The position numbers and the translations under genes were made by a program. Positions 14,422 to 62,819 of a stretch of 64,000 nt of DNA are shown piece by piece (the stretch's first letter is position 1; the number at the start of each line of letters is the position of its first letter). Under the pieces are notes generated by a model that was not told the DNA's origin, ran no database searches, and was given only the letters and a program-made list of their open reading frames with translations. The DNA lies in IMG/VR virus record IMGVR_UViG_3300035661_000001, positions 1 to 64,000 of that record. One strand, 5' to 3'.

Positions 14422-15534
14422 ATGAGCGCATGGTATTGTCAAGTAGTTTTGATTGAGGCAATTGATAAGCATCCAAATGCCGATTCTTTGTCTATTGCTA
14501 CTGTGCTAGGCGCACATCCAGTCATCATTAAGACTGGTGAATATGAAGTCGGACAGGCTGTTGGGTACATCGGTATTGACACCGTGGTTCCAGCGACTGC
14601 TCAGTTTCATTTCATGAGCCCAGTTGTTCGTGATGCTGATGCCAAGATATTGGGTCATAAGTACGAAGTGGATGAGGTTCCTGAGCGATACCGTATCGTG
14701 AAAGCAAAAAAGATTCGCAGTATTTTTAGCATGGGTCTTCTGGTTCCGGCTCCTGAAGGATTGAGTATCGGCGATTCTATTGTAGATGTTCTCGGTCTGA
14801 CCAAGTGGGAAGAGTCCGAAGAACAGGACGAGATTGCCCATAATAATCCCAAAGTCAGAACCAGAACAGATAAGAAACCTGTTGGTTGGGATATTCCCTT
14901 TTACGATATTAGTTCGGCGAGAAGACACAGTAATCTTTTTCTACCTGATGAGGAGATTGTTCTCCTTGAAAAAGATCATGGATGCAATGCATCATTTTGT
15001 TTTGATGGAGAGAAGCTTTGGAAAAAAAGCCGTAACTTCTTCAAAGCAGATGATGTTACCATCATTGATGGTGAAGGTATGACCCATACGGTATCGAGCA
15101 CTGACCATTGGAGTGAAGCTGCTAGACGATATAATCTGAGAGATAAGCTCGCACCTTTTTCTATGAAGGTTTTCTTTGCAGAATGTGTAGGTCAGGTAAA
15201 AGGTTTCAGGTACGATTCTGAAATTGTGGATGGTCAGCTTCTGACTAAGCTACACTTTTATGATGTATATGATCCGATAGAGCGGCGATATCTTGATTAC
15301 GAAGAGGGTCTTGAAATGATCCTTGCCGCAGGATTGACTCCCAGCAAAGAAATTTATAAGGGACCATGGCTTGGTAATGATAAGATGTTTCCTCTCGGCG
15401 AAGGCAAATCAAGTTGGAATGAAAAGCATGTTCGTGAAGGCTGGGTCATGAAGCCCTTGAAAGAAAGACATGTAGACAAAGTTGGGAGATGGCAATTGAA
15501 GTATGTGTCGGAGGCATATTCTTTGGCTAAGTAA
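14422..15534 (+). CDS. ATP-dependent RNA ligase, DRB0094/Rnl2-like with N-terminal tRNA-binding-like domain
   Basis: IDKHPNADSL N-domain; motif I EKDHGCN, III FFAECVG, IIIa FYDV, IV EGWVMKP, V LKYVSEAY. Confidence 0.9.
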   Translation: MSAWYCQVVLIEAIDKHPNADSLSIATVLGAHPVIIKTGEYEVGQAVGYIGIDTVVPATAQFHFMSPVVRDADAKILGHKYEVDEVPERYRIVKAKKIRSIFSMGLLVPAPEGLSIGDSIVDVLGLTKWEESEEQDEIAHNNPKVRTRTDKKPVGWDIPFYDISSARRHSNLFLPDEEIVLLEKDHGCNASFCFDGEKLWKKSRNFFKADDVTIIDGEGMTHTVSSTDHWSEAARRYNLRDKLAPFSMKVFFAECVGQVKGFRYDSEIVDGQLLTKLHFYDVYDPIERRYLDYEEGLEMILAAGLTPSKEIYKGPWLGNDKMFPLGEGKSSWNEKHVREGWVMKPLKERHVDKVGRWQLKYVSEAYSLAK

Positions 15535-18144: not shown

Positions 18145-18630
18145 ATGATGTGGTTTCAGAATCTTGCAGATCGGGAAGAAGCTGGTTGGTTTCAAGAGTT
18201 CCATAGTAATCCCGACAAGTTCGGCGACCTCTGGGCAATGACACCAAGCTATAAACTTCTGCCACCAGAAGGAGAGAATGATATCATTCTTCTCTCTACT
18301 GGAGGGTTTGCTCCCATCCATGATGGTCACATTGACATGATGGAAGCTGCAAAGATTCATATGGAGTCCAAAGGGTTCCGTGTTCGTGGCGGATATGTTT
18401 CTCCTGGTCATGATGGTTACGTCGTGGCACACAAAGGAGTTAAGATCTATGCGCCCGAACGATTGGCTTATGCCAACAACAAACTCAAAAGTCATCCGTG
18501 GATCATGGTTGATCCATGGGAAGCCATCGGTTGTAGTTGCAGTGTTAACTTCACGACGTACAAGAGTTCTATGGTAAGTCTCGAATCATCGTTCGTGGTG
18601 ATATCGAATTCACGGCGTTGGATTGACTGA
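18145..18630 (+). pseudogene. NMN/NaMN adenylyltransferase-like (HxGH) gene, apparently C-terminally truncated
   Basis: LLSTGGFAPIHDGH, GGYVSPGHDGYV, WIMVDPWE; ends soon after VNFTT with no ISST-type motif. Confidence 0.6.
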
Positions 18631-28541: not shown

Positions 28542-30092
28542 ATGGATATGGCTAGTAAGAAAACTGCTCCGGCGGCTAAGAAAGCAAAGCCGGAGCGTGA
28601 TGAGTTTGGTCGTTTCAAAACGAAGCTGGCAGCAATTGTCGGCGTAGCTTCCAAGGTGGTCACGAAGAAAGAGCCTGTCAGTAATAAAATTCTGACGAAG
28701 GATCTTTCAAAACTTTTCAGTCGTGCCAGGGCGAAGAGTGGTAATCCCATTTTCCTTCGTGCGGTCAATCAGCGTACTTCCGATATCAAGGATCGGTACG
28801 GTTATACTTTCTCTTACGGTCGTCTTCTCCCCGAAGCTGATAGGGAAATGATTCTCATTGCTGAGAATGATTACGGAAGTGGATTGTTTTACCTTACGTA
28901 TGAAACCATGATCGGTGCGCAGCGTCGCTCCAGCTATTTCGATGCCAGTTTCGAGTGGGAGCAGATTGATCCTGATCACAAGGATTACCCTGCCCGCATG
29001 GCAGAATACGATGCGAATCGTATTAAGACGTTGAGCACACGTCTTCATTACGACGGCAAGATTGGGTGTGATCCCGAGGTTTTTGTGGAGAGCGCAGCTG
29101 GGAGTATGATCCCTGCATTCCTTTTTCTCCCCAGCAAAGAGAAGCCTGCGCGGACTCCCAATTGGTCGAAGCATTTTAACGGTCATGGTGGAACCACCAT
29201 GTATTGGGATGGATTTCAGGGAGAATACACTACCAAGGCAAATTATTGTCTTGGTTATCATGGCGACTCCATTGCCGCTGGTTTGCGCGGTATCTATGAC
29301 GCAGCTCGAAAAAGGTTCAAGGATAGCAAGCTGAGTCTGCGTTCCGTCTTCCATCTTTCTCCGGAGATTTTGGAAGGTGCTCTCGATGAGCACGTTGCGT
29401 TTGGTTGCATGCCGAGCCTCAACGCATATGGTCTGAAGGTGAATATGCCTCCCGCTCGTGAGGTTCCTTTCCGGTCTGCTGGTGGTCATATCCACTTCGG
29501 TATCGGTAAGAAAAACCATCCCAAGGCTGGGAAAATCGTCAAGGCTCTTGACGCTGTTCTTGGTGTGGCTTGCGTGAGTTTGTTCGCAGAGTTCGATGAT
29601 CCTAATCGTCGCAAGCTGTATGGTTTGCCTGGCGAGTACCGTCTCCCTCCTCACGGCATTGAATACCGTACGTTGTCCAACGCGTGGCTGAGCCACCCGT
29701 TGATCATGAACATGGTGTTCGATCTTGCAAGGAAGGCAGTTATCTTTGGCAAGGATGATTACTTCGAGAAGCATTGGGTTGCTACAGAAGAGGAAGTTAT
29801 CAATTGCATTATCAATTGCGACGTGAAGGCGGCGCATAAGATGATGGAGAGAAACAAGGAAGCATTCCTTCAGTTGCTGAAGGCTTCTTATAGCTCTGCA
29901 CAGCCTGCTGAATTGGAGATGCTATATCAGGTCTTCATCAAGGGCATTCGTTCGGCTATCAAAGACCCTCTCGATCTGACTACCAATTGGCGGTTGGAAA
30001 GCGGTTGGAAGCCTCATTCGGGCGTCGTCGGCGAGCCCAATGCGAGAACCTTCTTGTACAATCGTCGCAACGATAGTGAGTGCAAGATGTGA
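28542..30092 (+). CDS. phiEco32-like COOH-NH2 ligase type 2, copy 1
   Basis: IGCDPEVF, WDGFQGE, FGCMP, FRSAGGHIHFG, RRKLYG.PGEYR, GIEYRTLSN. Confidence 0.9.
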   Translation: MDMASKKTAPAAKKAKPERDEFGRFKTKLAAIVGVASKVVTKKEPVSNKILTKDLSKLFSRARAKSGNPIFLRAVNQRTSDIKDRYGYTFSYGRLLPEADREMILIAENDYGSGLFYLTYETMIGAQRRSSYFDASFEWEQIDPDHKDYPARMAEYDANRIKTLSTRLHYDGKIGCDPEVFVESAAGSMIPAFLFLPSKEKPARTPNWSKHFNGHGGTTMYWDGFQGEYTTKANYCLGYHGDSIAAGLRGIYDAARKRFKDSKLSLRSVFHLSPEILEGALDEHVAFGCMPSLNAYGLKVNMPPAREVPFRSAGGHIHFGIGKKNHPKAGKIVKALDAVLGVACVSLFAEFDDPNRRKLYGLPGEYRLPPHGIEYRTLSNAWLSHPLIMNMVFDLARKAVIFGKDDYFEKHWVATEEEVINCIINCDVKAAHKMMERNKEAFLQLLKASYSSAQPAELEMLYQVFIKGIRSAIKDPLDLTTNWRLESGWKPHSGVVGEPNARTFLYNRRNDSECKM

Positions 30093-30095
30093 TGA

Positions 30096-30143
30096 TTGAA
30101 TGATCTCCGAGGTAGAAATGGTATTACCTCGGAGATCATTCAA
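30096..30143. repeat. 19-bp perfect inverted repeat after ligase 1
   Basis: TTGAATGATCTCCGAGGTA / TACCTCGGAGATCATTCAA with a 10-nt loop. Confidence 0.9.
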
Positions 30144-30299
30144 GTAGGTTGAACGGTGCGAACCCATCTCCGAATATTGAGTGGGAAGTACACCAAACGA
30201 GATGATTAGCAACCTAACGTGGTGAAGGGTTGCAAGTTCCCATCCAGCATAATCTGGATGATTGTTTGCTACAAAGACTTCAACAAAGAGAAAGAACAC

Positions 30300-31718
30300 A
30301 TGACGATCACATATCAGCAGATTTATGAGCAGCGTCTTCACGTCAAGATGACGATTTTCCATCTGAAGGATTCCTTGCTGCCGGAATCCTATGCCATTGA
30401 TGCCAATGGCAAAGCTATGCGCGATGCCGATCATGCTATCCATCGAGCAAAGTCGCTGCCGACTGATGTTATTGCAATTTCGGAAATCTATGCGAACAAG
30501 CAGTATTGGATGGCTCGTCTCATCAACGCCAAGACCGGCTTGCTGATTAATAATTGCCATATCAATCCTGATGATTCTCTCGAAGTGATTTCGGAAGGTC
30601 CGATCGTTGATACTTTCAAAAAGCTCATGGATGATAATTGTCATCATTTCATGATGCATAATTTCACGATCGGTTCCGATCCTGAGATTTTTGTGGAGGA
30701 CGAGGAGGGCGGATGTATTCCCTCTTGGCTGTTCCTTCAAGGCAAGAACGGTACTGATAAGACTTCCAATCTTATGATGTACGGTGGGAAGGGTGCCCAA
30801 AAGATGTATTGGGATGGTTACCAGGCAGAGTTTTGCGTCTTCGCAAATAACTGCAATGAGTACCACACCGACTCGGTGGCTGCTGGTTTGCGCGGCGTTC
30901 ATGATGCTGCCCGAAAGAAGTTTCCCAAATCGAAGCTTTCGGCTACCAGCGTTTTCGATATCTCTTCGGAGATGATGTCGGCCGCTGCTGATGAGCATGT
31001 GGAATTTGGTTGCATGCCGAGCTACAATGCTTATGGTATTGCCCCCAATCTTCCCCCTGGTCGTGAGGTCCCTTTCCGATCCGCTGGTGGTCATATCCAC
31101 TTCGGAACGGGCAAGATGAGCCACGAAGAGGCGAATCCGATTATCAAGACTTTGGATAAGATCTTGGGTGTCGCCTGTGTCAGTTTGTTCGGTGCATTCG
31201 ATTCGCGCAAGCGTCGGCACTTCTACGGTCTTCCTGGTGAATACCGTCTTCCTCCTCATGGCGTGGAATATCGACCGTTGTCGAACGCATGGCTGATCCA
31301 TCCGTTCATCATGAACATCGTGATTGATCTTGCACGTAAGGTGGTCGTTCTTGCTCAGCGTGACTGGGCAGATAAGTGGATCTCTGATGAGGCAGAGGTT
31401 ATTGATACCATCATTCGATGTGATGTGGTAGCGGCTCGTGCCTCGCTGGAGAAGAACAAGAAGTTGTTCAAGCAGCTTCTGAAGGCTTGTTATAGCGAAG
31501 GTACCTACACCTGGGCTGATGAAGATGATATCGAGGCTATCTTCGGTGTCTTCATGAATGGTCTGGAGTCCGCGGTGGAAGATCCGCGCGACTTCGTCAA
31601 GAACTGGAAGCTCGATGCTTCTGATACCAGCGTTGATCGTTGGTTGCCTGGCAACAAGACTTTCAATTGTCGAGCTTCGACTGCGGTTAAGACGCTGCGT
31701 TCTGGCAAGAAGGTCTGA
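30300..31718 (+). CDS. phiEco32-like COOH-NH2 ligase type 2, copy 2
   Basis: IGSDPEIF, WDGYQAE, FGCMP, FRSAGGHIHFG, GVEYRPLSN; different N-terminal domain. Confidence 0.9.
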   Translation: MTITYQQIYEQRLHVKMTIFHLKDSLLPESYAIDANGKAMRDADHAIHRAKSLPTDVIAISEIYANKQYWMARLINAKTGLLINNCHINPDDSLEVISEGPIVDTFKKLMDDNCHHFMMHNFTIGSDPEIFVEDEEGGCIPSWLFLQGKNGTDKTSNLMMYGGKGAQKMYWDGYQAEFCVFANNCNEYHTDSVAAGLRGVHDAARKKFPKSKLSATSVFDISSEMMSAAADEHVEFGCMPSYNAYGIAPNLPPGREVPFRSAGGHIHFGTGKMSHEEANPIIKTLDKILGVACVSLFGAFDSRKRRHFYGLPGEYRLPPHGVEYRPLSNAWLIHPFIMNIVIDLARKVVVLAQRDWADKWISDEAEVIDTIIRCDVVAARASLEKNKKLFKQLLKACYSEGTYTWADEDDIEAIFGVFMNGLESAVEDPRDFVKNWKLDASDTSVDRWLPGNKTFNCRASTAVKTLRSGKKV

Positions 31719-31728
31719 GAGTCTGAGA

Positions 31729-31773
31729 CTAATGATGTCTAACCAATCGAACATATGGGTTAGACATCATTAG
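31729..31773. repeat. 16-bp perfect inverted repeat after ligase 2
   Basis: CTAATGATGTCTAACC / GGTTAGACATCATTAG. Confidence 0.9.
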
Positions 31774-31842
31774 GTTGAATAAACTGAAAGTGTTATAGTT
31801 CGTAAATAAACTTTCGGTATACCAAATCCGTGAGAGATCATC

Positions 31843-32817
31843 ATGACGTTCAAACGTTTGCCGCAATATATGCCACAGATGCAACAAGGACTGCGCATTG
31901 CGGAGCCGCCACCGACCATCCCTGACGTAAAAGCCAGCGATGCCAATCCATCGATCTTTGATGATCCTTGGAATGATGAAGATACTCAACCGGGTCTGGG
32001 ACCTGTAGTACATAAGCCGGAGAACAAAATGTCACAAAAGCCTAGGGAAATCGAACGAAGCAATCTGATGTTCGTGTTCGGAAGATATCGTGAAGGGTTC
32101 AATCTTCACCGTGTCGTCGCACGAGATAAAGGTTTCAAAGGAATTACTCGTACTCTTCCTGAGTTCAAGCTGATCAATATCAACGGAGAGTTTCCTGTTG
32201 TTATTCCTGATGGCAAGGGACGGGTTGTTGGAGAGGTTTATGAATGCGAAAATAGAACTTTCGACTTCATGGATTCTCTGGAAGAGTGTCCTGGAACACA
32301 AAACAGAGTGATCATTTCGTTGGAGAATGGCGCTCGGGCTCATATGTATCTGCTTCCCAAGCATAAAGCTCCTAATCGTGAGGAAGAGATTCCTTCAGGT
32401 GATTGGGTTGAATGGAAGCGTAACGAGCGTTCCAGAGAGAAGGAAAAGAAAGAAAAGTTCATCGCGGCGATGGCGAAGGGTAAAGCTGAAGCTAATCGTA
32501 AGCGAGCCATTGAAGAAGAGCAGGCTGCTCTAGCGGCTGCTCATAGAGTTGCCAATCCTACGAATCATCTGGCTAACTTGTGGGATCCTATTCGTGGCAA
32601 GTGGGAAAAAGTTCCGCCCTCGAATGATACCAAGACCTCTCGTGAGATCACGGTCTATTCTAGTAAGAACGGCAAGAATCATGTTCATGTCTCTGATGTT
32701 GATATGGTTGTACTTCGTGCCAAACTGATATCAGATAATCAGTCTGTCCCGGAAACGGATTCACAAATTCGTAACAAGATCATGTCGATCTATGGTGTCT
32801 GGTTCGAGATTGGTTGA
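31843..32817 (+). CDS. gamma-glutamylcyclotransferase (AIG2-like) domain protein with N- and C-terminal extensions
   Basis: MFVFGRYREG...FPVVI...VVGEVYE...MDSLEE...AHMYL. Confidence 0.75.
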   Translation: MTFKRLPQYMPQMQQGLRIAEPPPTIPDVKASDANPSIFDDPWNDEDTQPGLGPVVHKPENKMSQKPREIERSNLMFVFGRYREGFNLHRVVARDKGFKGITRTLPEFKLININGEFPVVIPDGKGRVVGEVYECENRTFDFMDSLEECPGTQNRVIISLENGARAHMYLLPKHKAPNREEEIPSGDWVEWKRNERSREKEKKEKFIAAMAKGKAEANRKRAIEEEQAALAAAHRVANPTNHLANLWDPIRGKWEKVPPSNDTKTSREITVYSSKNGKNHVHVSDVDMVVLRAKLISDNQSVPETDSQIRNKIMSIYGVWFEIG

Positions 32818-42173: not shown

Positions 42174-43190
42174 ATGAGAGCTGATATTGTGATTGATTTG
42201 GTGAACGGTGACTCCGGAAAAGGAAAAGTAACACATCATCTCCTTGGAGAATCTATCAGGAACAATGTTCCATATACTCATGCTGTCCGGTATGGAGGAT
42301 CGTCCAACGCCGGACATTCGATCTATCACAATGAAAAGAAGTTCGTTACCCATTTGATTCCTGCCGGAGTCTTTTTTGGTATCCGATCAGTCATTGGTCC
42401 TGGATGTGTTTTGAATGTCAAGGCTTTTTTTGATGAGCTTAATGATCTCAAAATTAATGGTATCGACTGTGATAGACTTGTTAAGATTGCGCATAACAGT
42501 CATATCGTGACTGATGAACATCTTAAAGAGGATGGTCTTGATACCAAAATCGGTACGACTAAGCGCGGCGTCGGTCCAGCTTACCGTGATAAGTATGGTA
42601 GAACTGGTGTCCGTGCTGAGTCTATTCCTGAGTTGAAGCCTTATCTGATTGATTTTCTTGATGAGATTTTCGATGAGTCCAAGGGAGAAGCCAACCTCAT
42701 GTTGGAAGGTGCACAGGGACATTACCTGGACCCCATCTTCGGAGACTATCCGTACGTTACTAGTTCTCATTGTGGTGTTGGTGGAGCCATCATCAATGGA
42801 GTTCCGCATACGGCGATTGATATGGTGTTCGGCGCTTGCAAAGCATACGATACTTATGTCGGTGCGAAGAAGTTTGAACCAGATGGTGATGATGTTCTAC
42901 CATTGCTTCGTAAGGTCGGGTCCGAGTTCGGAGCAACGACTGGAAGACCAAGACAGTGTAACTATTTGAATCTGACTTCTCTTCGTCGAGCTTGTGAAGT
43001 GAATGACGTTACCCATCTGGTAGTATCGAAGATGGATGTTCTTCAGGAAGTGAATGTTTGGAAAGTTATCTGTGGTAGTAAGCTTATCGATATGGGTAAT
43101 GAAGATGACTTCAAAAGAATCGTGCATGGGTATGTTAATTCCAAAGGTGACAGAGACGTAATCTTCTCTTACACGCCACACGGAATTTGA
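42174..43190 (+). CDS. purA: adenylosuccinate synthetase (short form)
   Basis: GDSGKGK, NAGHS, HLIPAG, GTTKRGVGP.Y, EGAQG, YPYVTSS, GATTGRPR. Confidence 0.95.
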   Translation: MRADIVIDLVNGDSGKGKVTHHLLGESIRNNVPYTHAVRYGGSSNAGHSIYHNEKKFVTHLIPAGVFFGIRSVIGPGCVLNVKAFFDELNDLKINGIDCDRLVKIAHNSHIVTDEHLKEDGLDTKIGTTKRGVGPAYRDKYGRTGVRAESIPELKPYLIDFLDEIFDESKGEANLMLEGAQGHYLDPIFGDYPYVTSSHCGVGGAIINGVPHTAIDMVFGACKAYDTYVGAKKFEPDGDDVLPLLRKVGSEFGATTGRPRQCNYLNLTSLRRACEVNDVTHLVVSKMDVLQEVNVWKVICGSKLIDMGNEDDFKRIVHGYVNSKGDRDVIFSYTPHGI

Positions 43191-55647: not shown

Positions 55648-56331
55648 ATGAGCGAGTCAGTAGAATCTATTCTTGATAGAGTACAGAGAAATACTATTGC
55701 TGTACGCCATACCTTAATTGGTAAGGGTTGGTTTACTGCGCTCGAAGCTATGGAACTCGGAGCCAGTCTCCACAAAGGCAAACGAAAAGATGGAAAGACT
55801 CCTGAGTTTTTTCATCAGATTGAAATTGCTGGGTTTCTACTGACCATCGCTGATATGCTTCTGTATCCTGAAGATACGATTGCGGTTTCTTTTCTGCACG
55901 ATGCTCCAGAAGATTATGATATTGGATTCGAAGAACTAGAATCTAAATTCAATGGTAGAATCGCCCGAGCAACTAAGCTGATTACTAAGACCCATCGTGG
56001 TAAAAAGGTCCTGCCAGAAGTATACTTCTCTGAAATGGTGGATGATGCAATCTCTTCTGTAGTAAAAGGAGTGGACAGAATTCATAATCAAGGAAGTATG
56101 TTGGGAGTCTTCCCTCGTGCTAAACAAGATCTTTATGTGGATGAGACTACAAATCTTATTCTTCCTATGCTCAAGAACGCTAGGAAGAAACATTTCAGGC
56201 AATATAATGCCTACATGAACATCATGTTCGTGTTGAAAGGGCAGCTCAGCATGATTGCTGCAATGCATGCCGCTTTAGATAAGGAAGAAGAGCATGCCGC
56301 TTTAGATAAGGAAGAAGAGCATGGCGCTTGA
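55648..56331 (+). CDS. HD-domain hydrolase, RelA/SpoT-HD (Mesh1/SAH)-like
   Basis: H.G.RKDG.TP...H...LHDAPED...VK..DRIHN. Confidence 0.85.
   Translation: MSESVESILDRVQRNTIAVRHTLIGKGWFTALEAMELGASLHKGKRKDGKTPEFFHQIEIAGFLLTIADMLLYPEDTIAVSFLHDAPEDYDIGFEELESKFNGRIARATKLITKTHRGKKVLPEVYFSEMVDDAISSVVKGVDRIHNQGSMLGVFPRAKQDLYVDETTNLILPMLKNARKKHFRQYNAYMNIMFVLKGQLSMIAAMHAALDKEEEHAALDKEEEHGA
56265..56323 (+). repeat. 27-bp in-frame tandem duplication (HAALDKEEE x2)
   Basis: GCATGCCGCTTTAGATAAGGAAGAAGA occurs twice. Confidence 0.95.
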
Positions 56332-57832: not shown

Positions 57833-57960
57833 CGCTGACATAGTGGTGTGACATTCGGGAGAGCCCGCGCCCTCAAAGATAGAGGGTGGAGATATATTAG
57901 GGTTTTGGAAGCCCAACCTCTGACCGGGGTGTAATGAGGTTCGATCCCTCAATGTATCGC
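57833..57960 (+). ncRNA. Enlarged tRNA-like fold with several hairpins
   Basis: AGCG..ACAT/ATGT..CGCT closing stem; TGAGG-TTCGATC-CCTCA T arm. Confidence 0.4.
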
Positions 57961-58116: not shown

Positions 58117-58407
58117 ATGATTCCCAAGGAAGAAGATTACGTTCCCGGTGATTTGGTTTATAAGAGCGCGAGGTGGGCGGCAGCTTATCCTACGTGGAAT
58201 GTTTCGCGTGGAGTCATTATGACTTCTAGAAAATCTATAGTGCTTGATAGTTCTCTTGGAGCTAGCGACCGAAACATGTATCAAGAAAGATACGGAAAAC
58301 AGGAATGGTATCCTTGTTTTGAAATCCTCATCGCTACACCTCAAGGGAATTATCGAATTAGCCAATTCGGATTTAACAAGGACAATGAGGAGGAGCACTC
58401 GAAATGA
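58117..58407 (+). CDS. hypothetical protein (SH3-like)
   Basis: YVPGDLVY...GVI pattern. Confidence 0.6.
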   Translation: MIPKEEDYVPGDLVYKSARWAAAYPTWNVSRGVIMTSRKSIVLDSSLGASDRNMYQERYGKQEWYPCFEILIATPQGNYRISQFGFNKDNEEEHSK

Positions 58408-58898
58408 GTAAGTTGGAAAAGAGCTTTGAAAAAGCTTACAAGCAGTATGGTACGAAAATTGCTGGTAAAGTGAAGACCGCATATGATTCCGTCGGGGATC
58501 CAGCAAAACATGCGGTCGGTGCCAAGGCATTGGTTGAGGCTATCGCCATCTCTGATGCAAATGGTATTCCCTTCACCTCTCAAGTAGTTACAATAGGTAA
58601 TTACTTGATGCTGGCTGACAATCAGTACATTCCTGAGTCTTATTTTATCAAGTTCAAGGAGCTTGATAATAACAAGGCTTCCGCAGTAACTTCGGTCACC
58701 GTCGAAGCTCTGAACAAATATACTCCTCCTAGTAATTTCAACGAGCACTATGATGACGATGGCGAAGATTATGACGATGAGGATGATGAGGATGAGGATG
58801 ATGAGGATGATGAGGATGAGGATGAGGATGAGGATGAGGATGAGGATGAGGATGAGGAGGATGAGGAGGATGATGATTACGATGATGAAGAAGAGTGA
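58404..58898 (+). CDS. protein with a ~50-residue Asp/Glu C-terminal tract
   Basis: GAGGAG SD; tail DDDGEDYDDEDDEDED...EEE. Confidence 0.85.
   Translation: MSKLEKSFEKAYKQYGTKIAGKVKTAYDSVGDPAKHAVGAKALVEAIAISDANGIPFTSQVVTIGNYLMLADNQYIPESYFIKFKELDNNKASAVTSVTVEALNKYTPPSNFNEHYDDDGEDYDDEDDEDEDDEDDEDEDEDEDEDEDEDEEDEEDDDYDDEEE
58777..58880 (+). repeat. (GAGGAT)n/(GAT)n coding microsatellite
   Basis: Near-perfect GAGGAT and GAT units. Confidence 0.9.
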
Positions 58899-58977: not shown

Positions 58978-60180
58978 ATGCTTGAACAACTAGTGGAAAT
59001 GGGCAACAACGCTCCCCGCGTATTTGTTTACAGCACCGGAGCTGGTGCTGGTATTCAAGAAAAGATCTGGAGAACACTGGGCTGTTCTAATTTTCTGATT
59101 GGCTGCGGTTTTCCATATGCCGGATCTCAAACTAGTAAATACATAGGATATACTCCAGAACGATTTGTAAATGGAGATGTTGCTATGGAACTGGCAATGG
59201 CAGCTTACATTGAAGCTTATGAGCCAGGTAGAAAAACTATTGGTGTTGGATTAAGTTGCTCGGTCGCCTCTCTAGAAGCACACAAGGGAGCCCATCGCAT
59301 CATTGCTTCCAGCTTCTCTGATAATGAATGTTTGACTTTCGCCGCCGAGATTCCTAAAGGATATGGTTTAGGTCAACGTGTGACCGATGGTAATTTGGCT
59401 GATGAGATTGGTGTTGCAACTATTCTCAAAGCCGCAGGTCTTTGGAGCGAAAACCAAATGATCGCCTCTTCTATTCATCCAGAAGCTAACATGGAAATCA
59501 TACCTCCTCTGAGCGAAGGTGATATAAAACCAACCTCATATTTCATGAGGTATTCTCCTGTGAATACTGCTGATCGAGCCAAGGAACTGATTCTCTCTCG
59601 GTCGTTGTTCTCTGCAAATGGTTCAAGAATGTCTGAGAGCAAAGTTGATGACAGCAAGGTAATTCATTATCCTGGCAGTTTCAATCCTTTGCACTTCGGT
59701 CATATTGATGGATCTGAAGCTATCAGACAAACAGCAGCCAAACGGTTTGGCGAGTGTCGAGATATCGTTTTTGATACCGTTGCTAATCCTCCGCACAAAG
59801 CTGCGCCAACTGCCGCTCAATTGCTTGACAAGATCGCAATGATGCGTGGTAGGAATTTTTGCCTCACTTCTAATGATCCCTTGTTTATCGACAAGGCTAG
59901 GAAACATCCTGGTGCATGGTTCGGTCTCGGAGCCGATATGCTGATTACTATGCTGGACCCCAAGTGGGGTGTAGATCCAATAGAACTTCTTGCTGAGCTT
60001 CAAAAGCTTAATGTTAAGATATTTGTTTTGGGTCGTTGTGTCAAAGGAGAGTTCATCACTTTGGAAGACATTGTCGTTTCCAATAAGGTGATGTTGATGC
60101 CGTATCTTGACACTCTATTGATTTCTGTTCCTGGAAGGTGGGATATTAGTTCGACGGAAATTCGAGCTAGATCCAATTAA
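58978..60180 (+). CDS. CinA/PncC-like domain fused to NadD-like (HxGH) adenylyltransferase
   Basis: N-domain STGAGAG...PY...A.ELAMAAY...GVGLSC...G.HR; C-domain YPGSFNPLHFGH, FGLGAD, DISSTEIR. Confidence 0.8.
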   Translation: MLEQLVEMGNNAPRVFVYSTGAGAGIQEKIWRTLGCSNFLIGCGFPYAGSQTSKYIGYTPERFVNGDVAMELAMAAYIEAYEPGRKTIGVGLSCSVASLEAHKGAHRIIASSFSDNECLTFAAEIPKGYGLGQRVTDGNLADEIGVATILKAAGLWSENQMIASSIHPEANMEIIPPLSEGDIKPTSYFMRYSPVNTADRAKELILSRSLFSANGSRMSESKVDDSKVIHYPGSFNPLHFGHIDGSEAIRQTAAKRFGECRDIVFDTVANPPHKAAPTAAQLLDKIAMMRGRNFCLTSNDPLFIDKARKHPGAWFGLGADMLITMLDPKWGVDPIELLAELQKLNVKIFVLGRCVKGEFITLEDIVVSNKVMLMPYLDTLLISVPGRWDISSTEIRARSN

Positions 60181-60356: not shown

Positions 60357-60428
60357 ATCTAGGTAGCTCAATGGCAGAGCTTCGCATCTAAGCGAAAGAC
60401 ATGAGTTCGATCCTCATCCTAGAACCTA
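60357..60428 (+). tRNA. tRNA-like gene with 6-nt anticodon loop AUCUAA (CUA, or UCU with a deletion)
   Basis: TCTAGG/CCTAGA; GCTC-AATGGCA-GAGC; TTCGC-ATCTAA-GCGAA; ATGAG-TTCGATC-CTCAT; C-CTA. Confidence 0.7.
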
Positions 60429-61723: not shown

Positions 61724-62071
61724 ATGTATCTCAGCATAGATATGGATAACTATCCATTGCCGCTCTTGCCAATGTCTCGTGACTTGGTTGATAAGTTAAT
61801 CGAACTACGTGTCGTGACTCTGATGATGTCTTCAGAGGAAGAGGATTTGAATTTCCTCCGCGCACATGAAGTAGAAATTGATCCAGCTCATTCAATCATA
61901 ATTGAGCTGGGATGGAAACGTCCCCGAGGCGCACATGGACTTGATGTGGACTTTTCCATCTATGAAACAGGAGCCACAACAGATGAAGCTATCGAGATCG
62001 CTATTAATCAGTTTCAATTTCATCTGGAACATTTTCCAGACGATCCTCTCAATACTTTTAAGGAGATCTAG
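61724..62071 (+). CDS. acidic hypothetical protein
   Basis: AAGG SD. Confidence 0.7.
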   Translation: MYLSIDMDNYPLPLLPMSRDLVDKLIELRVVTLMMSSEEEDLNFLRAHEVEIDPAHSIIIELGWKRPRGAHGLDVDFSIYETGATTDEAIEIAINQFQFHLEHFPDDPLNTFKEI

Positions 62072-62075
62072 AAAA

Positions 62076-62819
62076 ATGTCTTTCCGAATTGTTCCGTATA
62101 AAAAGGGCAGTGAAGGTGCAAAGCTGCTTGCCTTGAAGATGACCGAGATTAGTGGTAAGAAGGTTGCCGCCGGTGATCCTAGCTATGACCATCGCAACCT
62201 TCTTTGGGGAACTACAAAGTATCCCTTGCTGAATTTGCAGCCAGCTGCAAGTATCGCTATTGCTCAGAACAAATTGAGCACGCTCAACAAGCTGAAACAG
62301 TCTGACGTTTCTGTTCCTGAATTCACTACTCTCAGAGCAACGGCAGAGGAGTGGATTAGAAACGGCACGGTAGTCGTGGCTCGCACGCTACTGAACGCTT
62401 CTGAGGGGCGTGGAATCGTTGTTTGTCGTACGGTTGAGGAACTTGTTCCGGCGCCTTTGTATGTCAAGCTGGTTACCAAGGATAAAGAATTCAGAGTTCA
62501 TGCCTGTAATGGTGTGGCTATTGATTTGCAGGAGAAGCGTCGCCGTAATGGAGCGCGTAATCCTGATGGCTCACGAATTGACGGTATGATTCGCAATATC
62601 GACAATAACTGGGTTTTTTGCAGGAACGGTATTGCTGAGCCCCGAGGACTGAGAGATCTGGGTATTAAAGCCGTTCAAGCCCTGGGTCTGCTGTTTGGTG
62701 CAGTGGATATCATTTACAACAGCCAGACCGGGCTAATGTATGTTTTGGAAGTTAATACCGCGCCTGGATTGTGTGAAAGCACCGCGACTCGGTATGCTCA
62801 GGCGTTTCTGGCGCTGTGA
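62076..62819 (+). CDS. ATP-grasp ligase (phiEco32/RimK-like)
   Basis: NKLSTL..L..VPEF...R..GRGI...KEFRVH...FGAVDII...VLEVNTAPGL. Confidence 0.9.
   Translation: MSFRIVPYKKGSEGAKLLALKMTEISGKKVAAGDPSYDHRNLLWGTTKYPLLNLQPAASIAIAQNKLSTLNKLKQSDVSVPEFTTLRATAEEWIRNGTVVVARTLLNASEGRGIVVCRTVEELVPAPLYVKLVTKDKEFRVHACNGVAIDLQEKRRRNGARNPDGSRIDGMIRNIDNNWVFCRNGIAEPRGLRDLGIKAVQALGLLFGAVDIIYNSQTGLMYVLEVNTAPGLCESTATRYAQAFLAL

What the first reader, a model, noticed from the sequence alone, without database searches (positions are those of the whole stretch)
58978..60180. CinA/PncC-like plus NadD-like fusion: candidate alternative phage NAD-reconstitution route
Seen: two-domain protein with intact HxGH and ISST motifs. 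The N-domain is CinA-C-like but lacks the canonical AESCTGG. Established: many defences deplete NAD+, and the described phage NARP1 and NARP2 routes use other enzyme pairs. PncC plus NadD would convert NMN to NaMN to NaAD, needing an amidation step. Inference: a distinct salvage route using host NadE or, speculatively, the phage GATase or amidoligase.
Basis: partly seen in the sequence, partly recalled or inferred. Interest (0 to 1): 0.6.

Follow-up and report, generated by a model that had tools for sequence, protein, structure and literature searches.

The report
Phage CinA-like/NMNAT-like NAD salvage enzyme
A 452-kb phage carries a real two-domain enzyme of an uncharacterised but widespread family that most likely performs the adenylyltransferase step of NAD+ salvage downstream of the phage's own nicotinamide phosphoribosyltransferase. 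This would be a variant of the known phage NAD+-rebuilding routes built with a different enzyme.

Summary

The N-domain keeps the three NMN-phosphate-binding residues (S37, Y47, R134, invariant in 89-90 of 90 relatives). It has Thr at the nucleophile Ser position and has lost the catalytic Lys and the motif Glu.

The protein belongs to a conserved family found in huge phages, Myxococcota, Planctomycetota and, per the ESM Atlas, plants. I found no description of it in the searchable literature. In five bacterial loci and two phages the gene sits directly downstream of nadV (NAMPT), three times behind NrtR.

This phage has NadV 95 kb away and an NAD+-dependent ligase. It has no NadE, Prs, PnuC or other intact NMNAT.

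Best reading (about 0.45): it is the adenylyltransferase partner of NadV, taking NMN directly, which makes a NARP2-like route. Amidation by the phage amidoligase or GATase is unsupported.

The parts
58978..60180 (+). Whole gene: 400-aa two-domain protein (P0001), stop codon included
58978..59439 (+). N-domain, residues 1-154: CinA/PncC fold without the Ser/Lys dyad
59035..59052 (+). TGAGAG (residues 20-25), replacing SCTGG of PncC. T20 aligns with the nucleophile Ser29 of E. coli PncC
   Evidence: T20 is T in 83 and S in 4 of 90; G21 89 of 90; G23 88 of 90
59086..59118 (+). S37 to Y47: equivalents of PncC S46/Y56 (E. coli numbering), which bind the NMN phosphate. T52, just downstream, takes the place of the catalytic Lys61
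   Evidence: residue roles from PMC5384747 and PMC4246079
59281..59388 (+). Family-specific conserved basic/acidic residues: H102 (H/K/R in 89 of 90), H106, R107, K127, R134 (90 of 90, equivalent to the phosphate-binding Arg of PncC), D137
   Evidence: The R134 equivalence comes from motif position, not from the hhalign block, which ends at residue 93
59440..59652 (+). Linker, residues 155-225; variable in length, lower pLDDT (55-72 around residues 161-190)
59653..60177 (+). C-domain, residues 226-400: HIGH-superfamily pyridine-mononucleotide adenylyltransferase fold
59692..59703 (+). HFGH (residues 239-242), first ATP-binding motif; H239 and H242 invariant in 90 of 90
60145..60165 (+). ISSTEIR (residues 390-396), second ATP-binding motif; S392 89 of 90, R396 88 of 90

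Best explanation
The gene encodes the pyridine-mononucleotide adenylyltransferase of a phage NAD+ salvage pathway. The phage's own NadV/NAMPT lies outside the window, at genome bases 154900-156279. It makes NMN from nicotinamide and PRPP, and the C-domain of this protein (HFGH, ISSTEIR) adenylylates NMN with ATP to give NAD+ directly. The pair therefore works like NARP2, with a non-orthologous enzyme in place of the NadM-Nudix type Nmnat.

The N-domain descends from an NMN deamidase and still has the mononucleotide phosphate pocket (S37, Y47, R134). It has lost the Lys base and the motif Glu. I take it to bind NMN for capture or control rather than to deamidate it.

A second NMN source is the phage's NAD+-dependent DNA ligase.

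Shown: the ORF, both folds, the motif status, membership of a conserved family, nadV linkage in relatives, and the NAD gene content of the phage. Inferred: substrate (NMN rather than NaMN), the non-catalytic role of the N-domain, and the anti-defence use.

The confidence of 0.45 is for this full statement, including direct use of NMN. The narrower claim that this is an NAD-pathway adenylyltransferase I hold at about 0.85.
For: - Folds and motifs.
- The gene lies immediately downstream of NAMPT, with a 4-nt overlap to about 50-nt gap, in bacterial loci L002, L003, L005, L008 and L010 and phage loci L058 and L060. An NrtR-type regulator sits upstream in L002, L005 and, by BLAST cluster, L008, L010 and L060.
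- All nadV-linked cases and all phage copies fall in one subfamily.
- This phage has NadV (NF006629, 627 bits). The fusion is its only intact PF01467 protein. It has no NadE, no Prs/Adps and no PnuC, so NadV plus this protein is complete only if NMN is used directly.
- The catalytic Lys and Glu of PncC are lost while the binding residues are invariant. That is the usual pattern for a binding domain that no longer catalyses.
- Bacteria carrying the fusion also have a canonical PncC, a NadD-sized nucleotidyltransferase and NadE. A plain PncC+NadD would be redundant there.
- The phage has LigA.
Against: - Position 20 is Thr or Ser in 87 of 90 relatives and position 102 is H/K/R in 89 of 90. A re-built nucleophile/base pair, and so real deamidase activity, is not excluded.
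- PncC and NadD catalyse consecutive steps, which is the classic reason for a fusion.
- Sequence profiles place the C-domain nearest to NadD, which prefers NaMN.
- 5 of 12 related phage records encode a true NadE. G005 has NadE with the fusion as its only PF01467 protein, which needs NaAD formation.
- G004 and G007 already have a NadM-sized gene next to NadV, so a second direct NMNAT would be redundant there.
- NadV is absent from 22 of 25 bacterial genomes with the family and from two near-complete phages, so the NadV partnership is not obligatory.
- In this phage the two genes are 95 kb apart.
- No biochemical data exist.
Confidence: 0.45

Rival explanations
1. The N-domain is an active NMN deamidase with a re-built catalytic site (Thr20 plus a His/Lys at position 102). 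The C-domain is a NaMN adenylyltransferase. Together they convert NMN (from NadV or from LigA turnover) to NaMN and then NaAD, which host NadE amidates to NAD+. In some relatives a phage NadE does this step.
For: - The two steps are consecutive and fused.
- T/S at the nucleophile position in 87 of 90, a basic residue at 102 in 89 of 90, and an intact phosphate pocket.
- HMM matches of the C-domain are to NadD.
- True NadE (TIGR00552 above its cut-off) occurs in 5 of 12 other fusion-carrying phage records. It overlaps NadV by 4 nt in G004. In G005 it accompanies the fusion as the only PF01467 protein.
- Three further NadE-carrying huge phages have fusion-sized PF01467 ORFs.
- From general knowledge, not checked here: a NadV-PncC-NadD-NadE route is described for Shewanella.
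Against: - The Lys that both proposed PncC mechanisms need, and the invariant Glu, are absent. K63A abolishes activity in AtCinA (PMC5384747).
- No candidate replacement base is strictly invariant.
- This phage has no NadE.
- In G001 and G003 NadE sits in a module with a different 420-aa NMNAT-PRT protein, which could explain NadE there.
- Bacteria with the fusion already have canonical PncC and NadD-sized genes.
Confidence: 0.35
2. The protein acts in nucleotide metabolism but not as an NMN/NaMN enzyme. The N-domain pocket, enlarged by extra basic residues, binds a larger phosphorylated ligand such as ADP-ribose, PRPP or a dinucleotide. The C-domain would then adenylylate, or its reverse reaction cleave, another substrate.
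For: - Five added conserved basic positions (102, 103, 106, 107, 127) go beyond what PncC uses for one phosphate.
- Most bacterial members have no NAD genes as neighbours.
Against: NrtR-nadV operon membership; every structural and profile match of the C-domain is to NMN/NaMN adenylyltransferases ahead of other HIGH enzymes.
Confidence: 0.12
3. A phage COOH-NH2 ligase, GATase or ATP-grasp enzyme amidates NaAD, making the route independent of NadE. The reader marked this as speculative.
For: The window does hold two phiEco32-type COOH-NH2 ligases (28542-30089, 30219-31715) and a weak ATP-grasp (61902-62816).
Against: The ligases lie 27 kb upstream, next to a GGACT gene, and show no link to NAD genes. 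Relatives that need amidation carry a normal NadE instead. No conserved neighbourhood joins these genes to the fusion.
Confidence: 0.03

Closest known systems
NARP2 (phage Nampt plus NadM-Nudix type Nmnat, Vibrio phage KVP40; bioRxiv 10.1101/2024.02.11.579819)
   Same: A phage-encoded NAMPT is paired with a phage-encoded HIGH-superfamily pyridine-nucleotide adenylyltransferase. The expected net reaction is nicotinamide to NAD+.
   Different: The adenylyltransferase is not the NadM-Nudix type. It has an NMNAT/NadD-like fold preceded by a CinA-fold domain, and no Nudix. The two genes are 95 kb apart. Substrate (NMN or NaMN) is untested. Some relatives (G004, G007) appear to have a NadM-sized gene beside NadV in addition to this gene.
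PncC / CinA C-terminal domain, NMN deamidase (PF02464; 2a9s, 4ct8/4uoc)
   Different: AESCTGG becomes (A/S)TGAGAG: Glu is lost, Ser becomes Thr, Cys becomes Gly. The catalytic Lys becomes Thr or Leu. A new conserved H/K-R-G-x-H-R block, K127 and D137 appear. The domain was found only fused to the adenylyltransferase.
NadD (bacterial NaMN adenylyltransferase) and eukaryotic NMNAT1-3
   Same: Fold, HxGH and ISSTxxR motifs, a PPHK-like motif (residues 271-274) and an aromatic residue at the PKW position (W330).
   Different: Only 18-24% identity. It is far below the NadD equivalog cut-off (26 bits against 112). It is always fused to the CinA-like domain. Carrier bacteria have a separate NadD-sized gene.
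Bacterial NrtR-regulated nadV-nadM salvage operons
   Same: In relatives the gene occupies the position after nadV, behind an NrtR-type regulator.
   Different: A different enzyme family fills that slot, and in this phage the operon is dispersed.
Yeast Pof1, NMN-specific NMNAT (PMC13191266)
   Same: Possibly the same adenylyltransferase subfamily. This is a recollection only. The Atlas shows a 398-aa plant cluster with the same two-domain build.
   Different: Not tested: no Pof1 sequence was available to the tools. Pof1 is reported as a shorter protein and I did not see a CinA-like domain mentioned for it.

Membership tests
PncC / CinA-C NMN deamidase (PF02464) | CinA-C fold and detectable homology | tested here: met
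PncC / CinA-C NMN deamidase (PF02464) | Nucleophile Ser within the ESCTGG block (S31 AtCinA, S29 E. coli) | tested here: not met
   Thr20 aligns with the Ser. The Glu becomes Ser19 (variable A/V/C/S in the family) and the Cys becomes Gly21.
PncC / CinA-C NMN deamidase (PF02464) | General-base Lys (K63 AtCinA, K61 E. coli, K301 TtCinA), described as absolutely conserved | tested here: not met
   Thr52 aligns with it. The column is T42/L25/Q8 and others in 90 relatives. Residue role from PMC5384747 and PMC4246079.
PncC / CinA-C NMN deamidase (PF02464) | NMN phosphate-binding Ser, Tyr and Arg | tested here: met
   S37 (89 of 90), Y47 (90 of 90), R134 (90 of 90). R134 is assigned by motif position.
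PncC / CinA-C NMN deamidase (PF02464) | NMN deamidase activity | not testable with these tools
   Needs an enzyme assay.
NadD / NMNAT (HIGH nucleotidyltransferase, PF01467, TIGR00482) | PF01467 above the gathering score, with HxGH and ISSTxxR motifs | tested here: met
   31.3 bits against 21; HFGH 239-242 and ISSTEIR 390-396; both invariant in the family.
NadD / NMNAT (HIGH nucleotidyltransferase, PF01467, TIGR00482) | NadD equivalog score (TIGR00482, NF000839) | tested here: not met
   26.1 bits against a cut-off of 112.45; 22.3 against 187.
NadD / NMNAT (HIGH nucleotidyltransferase, PF01467, TIGR00482) | NMNAT/NadD fold | tested here: met
NadD / NMNAT (HIGH nucleotidyltransferase, PF01467, TIGR00482) | Substrate preference, NaMN (NadD) or NMN (NMNAT) | not testable with these tools
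   In solved enzymes specificity rests largely on main-chain contacts (general knowledge). Genome context points both ways.
NARP2 | Phage-encoded Nampt | tested here: met
   459-aa NAMPT-family ORF at genome 154900-156279: PF04095 1e-60; NF006629 627 bits; 52-57% identical to bacterial proteins carrying NAMPT_N.
NARP2 | Nmnat homologous to the KVP40 NadM-Nudix enzyme | tested here: not met
   The only intact PF01467 ORF in the genome is this fusion. The other hit is a truncated remnant. No Nudix domain is fused; the three Nudix ORFs lie elsewhere.
NARP2 | Rebuilds NAD+ and rescues phage from NAD+-depleting defence | not testable with these tools
   Needs infection assays.
NARP1 | Adps (Prs-like) next to Namat | tested here: not met
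   No PF13793 match in the 452-kb genome.
NARP3 | PnuC transporter plus NadR-like enzyme | tested here: not met
   No PF04973 match. System definition from PMC13464706.

The most novel reading that the evidence does not exclude
This family is a third, so far uncharacterised class of microbial NMN adenylyltransferase. It would have arisen from a PncC-NadD fusion whose deamidase became an NMN-capturing pseudo-enzyme. In huge phages it would pair with NadV as a NARP2-like counter to NAD+-depleting defences. If instead the N-domain is active, phages such as G003 and G004 would encode a complete four-step NadV, deamidase, NaMNAT, NadE route not yet described for viruses.
Probability: 0.4. Interest if true: 0.65.

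Novelty: new variant of a known kind. Interest (0 to 1): 0.55.

Why it matters
Phage NAD+ reconstitution (NARP1-3) is a young field. Its surveys look for NadM- or NadR-type adenylyltransferases, so phages using this family would be scored as having NadV alone.

The family is conserved from huge phages to Myxococcota, Planctomycetota and apparently plants, and I found no functional description of it. One enzyme assay would annotate hundreds of proteins.

That assay would also settle whether a CinA fold without the Ser/Lys dyad still deamidates NMN. The answer bears on how 'inactive' CinA paralogues are classified.

Tried and rejected
- PHROGs gave no match. A single-sequence PDB search gave only noise.
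- The N-domain profile against PDB sequences gave nothing useful, although the structure comparison did.
- Stand-alone N-domain proteins: a single-sequence search found none. A profile search found 35 short proteins, and those I checked are fragments. P0137 is a fusion truncated after PPHK, and P0149 lies on a contig with many split genes. I therefore did not use 'the N-domain works alone' as evidence.
- NadV co-occurrence in phage genomes: 7 of 13 records, 3 of 5 near-complete. This is not clearly above the 33% reported for jumbo phages (PMC9503650), so I rely on operon adjacency instead.
- Neighbours of the Planctomycetota subfamily (TPR-CHAT, GNAT, ROK and others) carry no NAD signal.
- NadE co-occurrence first looked decisive for the deamido route. 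It was weakened when G001 and G003 turned out to have NadE in a module with another nucleotidyltransferase.
- Literature searches for the fusion, and for a plant accession I recalled, found nothing. The original Pof1 paper is not held.
- The first related-loci run with the 43-sequence alignment failed for lack of a conserved stretch.
- The careful tree did not finish, so the quick tree is used.
- Not used: the big representative search, because the top 150 would be filled by the fusion family itself; the read-mapping tools; complex prediction.

Full report
**Setting.** The window is bases 1-64000 of a single 451,956-bp virus record with direct terminal repeats, estimated 100% complete: a huge phage. 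Genes run almost entirely on the + strand.

**1. The observation.**
- ORF 58978-60180(+) encodes 400 residues with no internal stops.
- HFGH (239-242) and ISSTEIR (390-396) are present inside a PF01467 match above the gathering score.
- NCBIfam gives only weak, N-terminal matches to NadD models, far below their cut-offs.
- The N-terminal part reads YSTGAGAG where PncC has AESCTGG, and it gets no Pfam hit of its own.
- PHROGs has nothing. Only one deposited phage genome, a 485-kb uncultured phage, holds a relative.

**2. The family.**
- A word-based search found 232 full-length relatives of 330-470 aa. All cover both domains, with 33-65% identity. They come from metagenomes, huge-phage contigs and bacterial genomes, and nearly all are unnamed or named after one domain or the other.
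- A 43-sequence alignment shows two blocks of strong conservation.
- As a profile it hits solved NadD structures (1kam, 4e-8). No CinA structure reaches the sequence threshold, but 27 of the 43 members individually hit Pfam CinA.
- The AlphaFold model is confident (pLDDT 92.3, pTM 0.91). The high pTM suggests that the two domains pack in a fixed way.
- Foldseek finds both NadD and CinA structures.

**3. Active-site status of the N-domain.**
- I built a canonical PncC alignment from E. coli pncC and from the strong PF02464 matches in the bacterial genomes that carry the fusion. I compared it with the N-domain profile (probability 95%, E 2.4e-8).
- The register puts Thr20 on the nucleophile Ser29, Ser19 on the invariant Glu28, Gly21 on Cys30, G35/S37 on G44/S46, Tyr47 on Tyr56 and Thr52 on the general-base Lys61.
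- In AtCinA, the S31A, K63A, Y58A and R145A mutants are inactive. Phosphate is held by R145, Y58 and S48 (PMC5384747). TtCinA shows the same contacts, and its authors call the Lys absolutely conserved (PMC4246079).
- Counts over 90 family members, including a deeply divergent subfamily:

| Position | Counts in 90 members |
|---|---|
| T20 | T83, S4 |
| S37 | 89 |
| Y47 | 90 |
| R134 | 90 |
| R107 | 85 |
| H106 | 76 |
| K127 | 76 |
| 102 | H62, K21, R6 |
| D137 | D69, E15 |
| 52 (the Lys column) | T42, L25, Q8 and others |

- The mononucleotide phosphate pocket is therefore intact. A hydroxyl is kept at the nucleophile site. The Lys/Glu pair is gone, and a new set of mostly basic residues is conserved.
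- This fits either a ligand-binding domain that no longer deamidates or a deamidase with a re-built base. I had no access to model coordinates, so I could not test whether T20, H102 and D137 are in contact.
- No true stand-alone version of this N-domain turned up.

**4. Genomic context in relatives.**
- In two assemblies the gene follows NAMPT (NAMPT_N plus NAPRTase) by a 4-nt overlap or a 10-nt gap. In one of them the pair sits behind a Nudix/NrtR-type regulator.
- I surveyed 38 bacterial loci and 13 viral loci. NAMPT is immediately upstream in L002, L003, L005, L008 and L010 and in phage loci L058 and L060.
- A conserved upstream gene in L005, L008, L010 and L060 is NUDIX plus the NrtR winged helix.
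- A quick maximum-likelihood tree splits the family into two subfamilies. Subfamily A holds all phage copies plus Polyangiaceae, Chlamydiota, Methylobacter and others, and contains every nadV-linked case. Subfamily B holds Planctomycetota, Pseudomonadales and Flavobacterium.
- Only 3 of 25 carrier genomes have a NAMPT at all.
- In subfamily B the conserved neighbours have nothing to do with NAD.
- Carrier genomes also have a canonical CinA/PncC (23 of 25), NadD-sized PF01467 genes and NadE (25 of 25).
- The fusion is therefore an extra, specialised enzyme and not the housekeeping NadD or PncC.

**5. NAD genes of this phage.**
- Outside the window, at 154900-156279, lies a 459-aa NAMPT-family gene. 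It scores 627 bits on NF006629 and is 52-57% identical to the bacterial operon NAMPTs.
- An NAD+-dependent DNA ligase, which releases NMN, lies at about 161.3 kb.
- There is no NadE, no Prs/Adps and no PnuC. Three Nudix ORFs stand alone.
- The only other PF01467 signal is at window 18145-18627. This is the first 140 or so residues (68% identity) of a 420-aa nucleotidyltransferase-phosphoribosyltransferase protein. In the close relatives G001 and G003 that protein is intact and lies near NadE. Here it is truncated before the second ATP motif, and NadE is missing.
- This phage therefore keeps NadV, LigA and the fusion as its only intact NAD enzymes.

**6. NAD genes of related phages**.

| Record | NAD genes found |
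|---|---|
| G003 | NadV, NadE, the 420-aa protein, the fusion |
| G001 | NadE, the 420-aa protein, the fusion; no NadV |
| G004 | a 341-aa PF01467 ORF just upstream of NadV; NadV overlapping NadE by 4 nt; the fusion elsewhere |
| G007 | a 347-aa PF01467 ORF near NadV; the fusion; no NadE |
| G005 (92% complete) | only NadE and the fusion |
| G010, G036, G037 | NadV with the fusion; adjacent in G036 and G037 |

- The NadE proteins pass the TIGR00552 cut-off.
- NadE is not rare in huge phages, and it usually travels with a small NadD-like gene or a fusion-sized one.
- These sets show that the fusion works with NadV in some phages, and alongside NadE without NadV in at least one. The adenylyltransferase domain must therefore accept NaMN in at least some lineages, or else NadE there depends on host NaAD.

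**7. Mechanism.**
- Two readings fit the data.
- (a) The C-domain takes NMN, perhaps NaMN as well, and the N-domain only binds the mononucleotide. NadV plus this gene is then a self-sufficient NARP2-like route.
- (b) The N-domain deamidates NMN and the C-domain makes NaAD, and NadE finishes the job.
- I rank (a) slightly higher at 0.45, for four reasons:
  - The residues that both published PncC mechanisms require are lost while the binding residues stay invariant.
  - The fold is nearest to dual-specificity NMNATs.
  - A plain PncC+NadD would duplicate genes the carrier bacteria already have.
  - This phage has shed NadE but kept NadV and the fusion.
- I give (b) 0.35. The two steps are consecutive, a hydroxyl and a basic residue remain conserved near the site, and NadE recurs in related phages.
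- A role outside NMN/NaMN chemistry gets about 0.12.
The two phiEco32-type COOH-NH2 ligases lie 27 kb upstream beside a GGACT gene, and the ATP-grasp two genes downstream is a weak match.

**8. Comparison with known systems.**
- NARP2 is defined as Nampt plus a KVP40-type Nmnat (bioRxiv 10.1101/2024.02.11.579819).
- NARP3 is PnuC plus NadR (PMC13464706).
- A broad survey of viral NAD systems lists only NadM and NadR as phage adenylyltransferases, and reports NadV in 33% of jumbo phages (PMC9503650).
- None of the searches found this fusion described.
- The ESM Atlas holds a 398-aa, mostly plant cluster with the same two-domain build.
- From memory only, yeast Pof1, an NMN-specific NMNAT (PMC13191266), may belong to the same adenylyltransferase branch. 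I could not test this.

**9. Verdict.** This is a real gene with correctly recognised domains, and it is a member of an uncharacterised family tied to NAD salvage. It is best filed as a new variant of the NadV-based phage NAD+ route, with the chemistry of the N-domain open. Interest is moderate to good: one simple enzyme assay would decide between the two mechanisms and annotate a large family.

Noticed in passing
window 18145-18630 (+): A 161-aa ORF that is the truncated N-terminal third (68% identity over about 140 residues, HxGH kept) of a 420-aa nucleotidyltransferase-phosphoribosyltransferase protein. That protein is intact in the related phages G001 and G003, where it lies near NadE. Here the rest of the gene and NadE are missing.
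   Followed up: partly
window 42174-43190 (+): A short (338-aa) adenylosuccinate-synthetase homologue (PF00709, 6e-74). Its size recalls the phage PurZ enzymes of 2-aminoadenine genomes. I did not look for the companion genes.
   Followed up: no
window 28542-32817 (+): Two tandem phiEco32-type COOH-NH2 ligases (PF14395) followed by a GGACT-domain protein. This looks like a peptide or metabolite-modification block.
   Followed up: partly
window 60357-60426 (+), also 57891-57960 and five more: Seven tRNA calls in the window. One, directly downstream of the fusion gene, has an irregular anticodon loop (ARAGORN 'tRNA-???'). A tRNA-Val lies 1 kb upstream. Two identical-anticodon tRNA-Arg(tct) sit at 42-243.
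   Followed up: no
window 14422-15534 (+): RNA ligase (PF09414) with a PHA02142-type OB domain.
   Followed up: no
window 55648-56331 (+): A 227-aa HD_4 (RelA/SpoT-type HD) protein with a duplicated 'HAALDKEEE' tail. It is followed by acidic proteins, and ORF 58404-58898 ends in a D/E run of about 50 residues.
   Followed up: no
L087 (G004:C1:94000-99000) and G007:C1:145604-147938: In two related huge phages a 341- or 347-aa PF01467 ORF (the size of NadM-Nudix) lies just upstream of NadV. In G004, NadV overlaps a true NadE by 4 nt. A viral NadM-NadV-NadE cluster would be unusual.
   Followed up: partly
Genomes G019, G023, G024, G029 and others (Planctomycetota): The canonical CinA homologue (425-470-aa ORFs) lies within about 1.5 kb of NadE in at least eight of these genomes, separately from the fusion gene.
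   Followed up: no
A5 rows L076-L079: Some strong PF02464 proteins in carrier bacteria read AESSTGG ... Y-T-x-x-S-R, with Arg in place of the catalytic Lys. This is another CinA paralogue type of doubtful deamidase activity.
   Followed up: no
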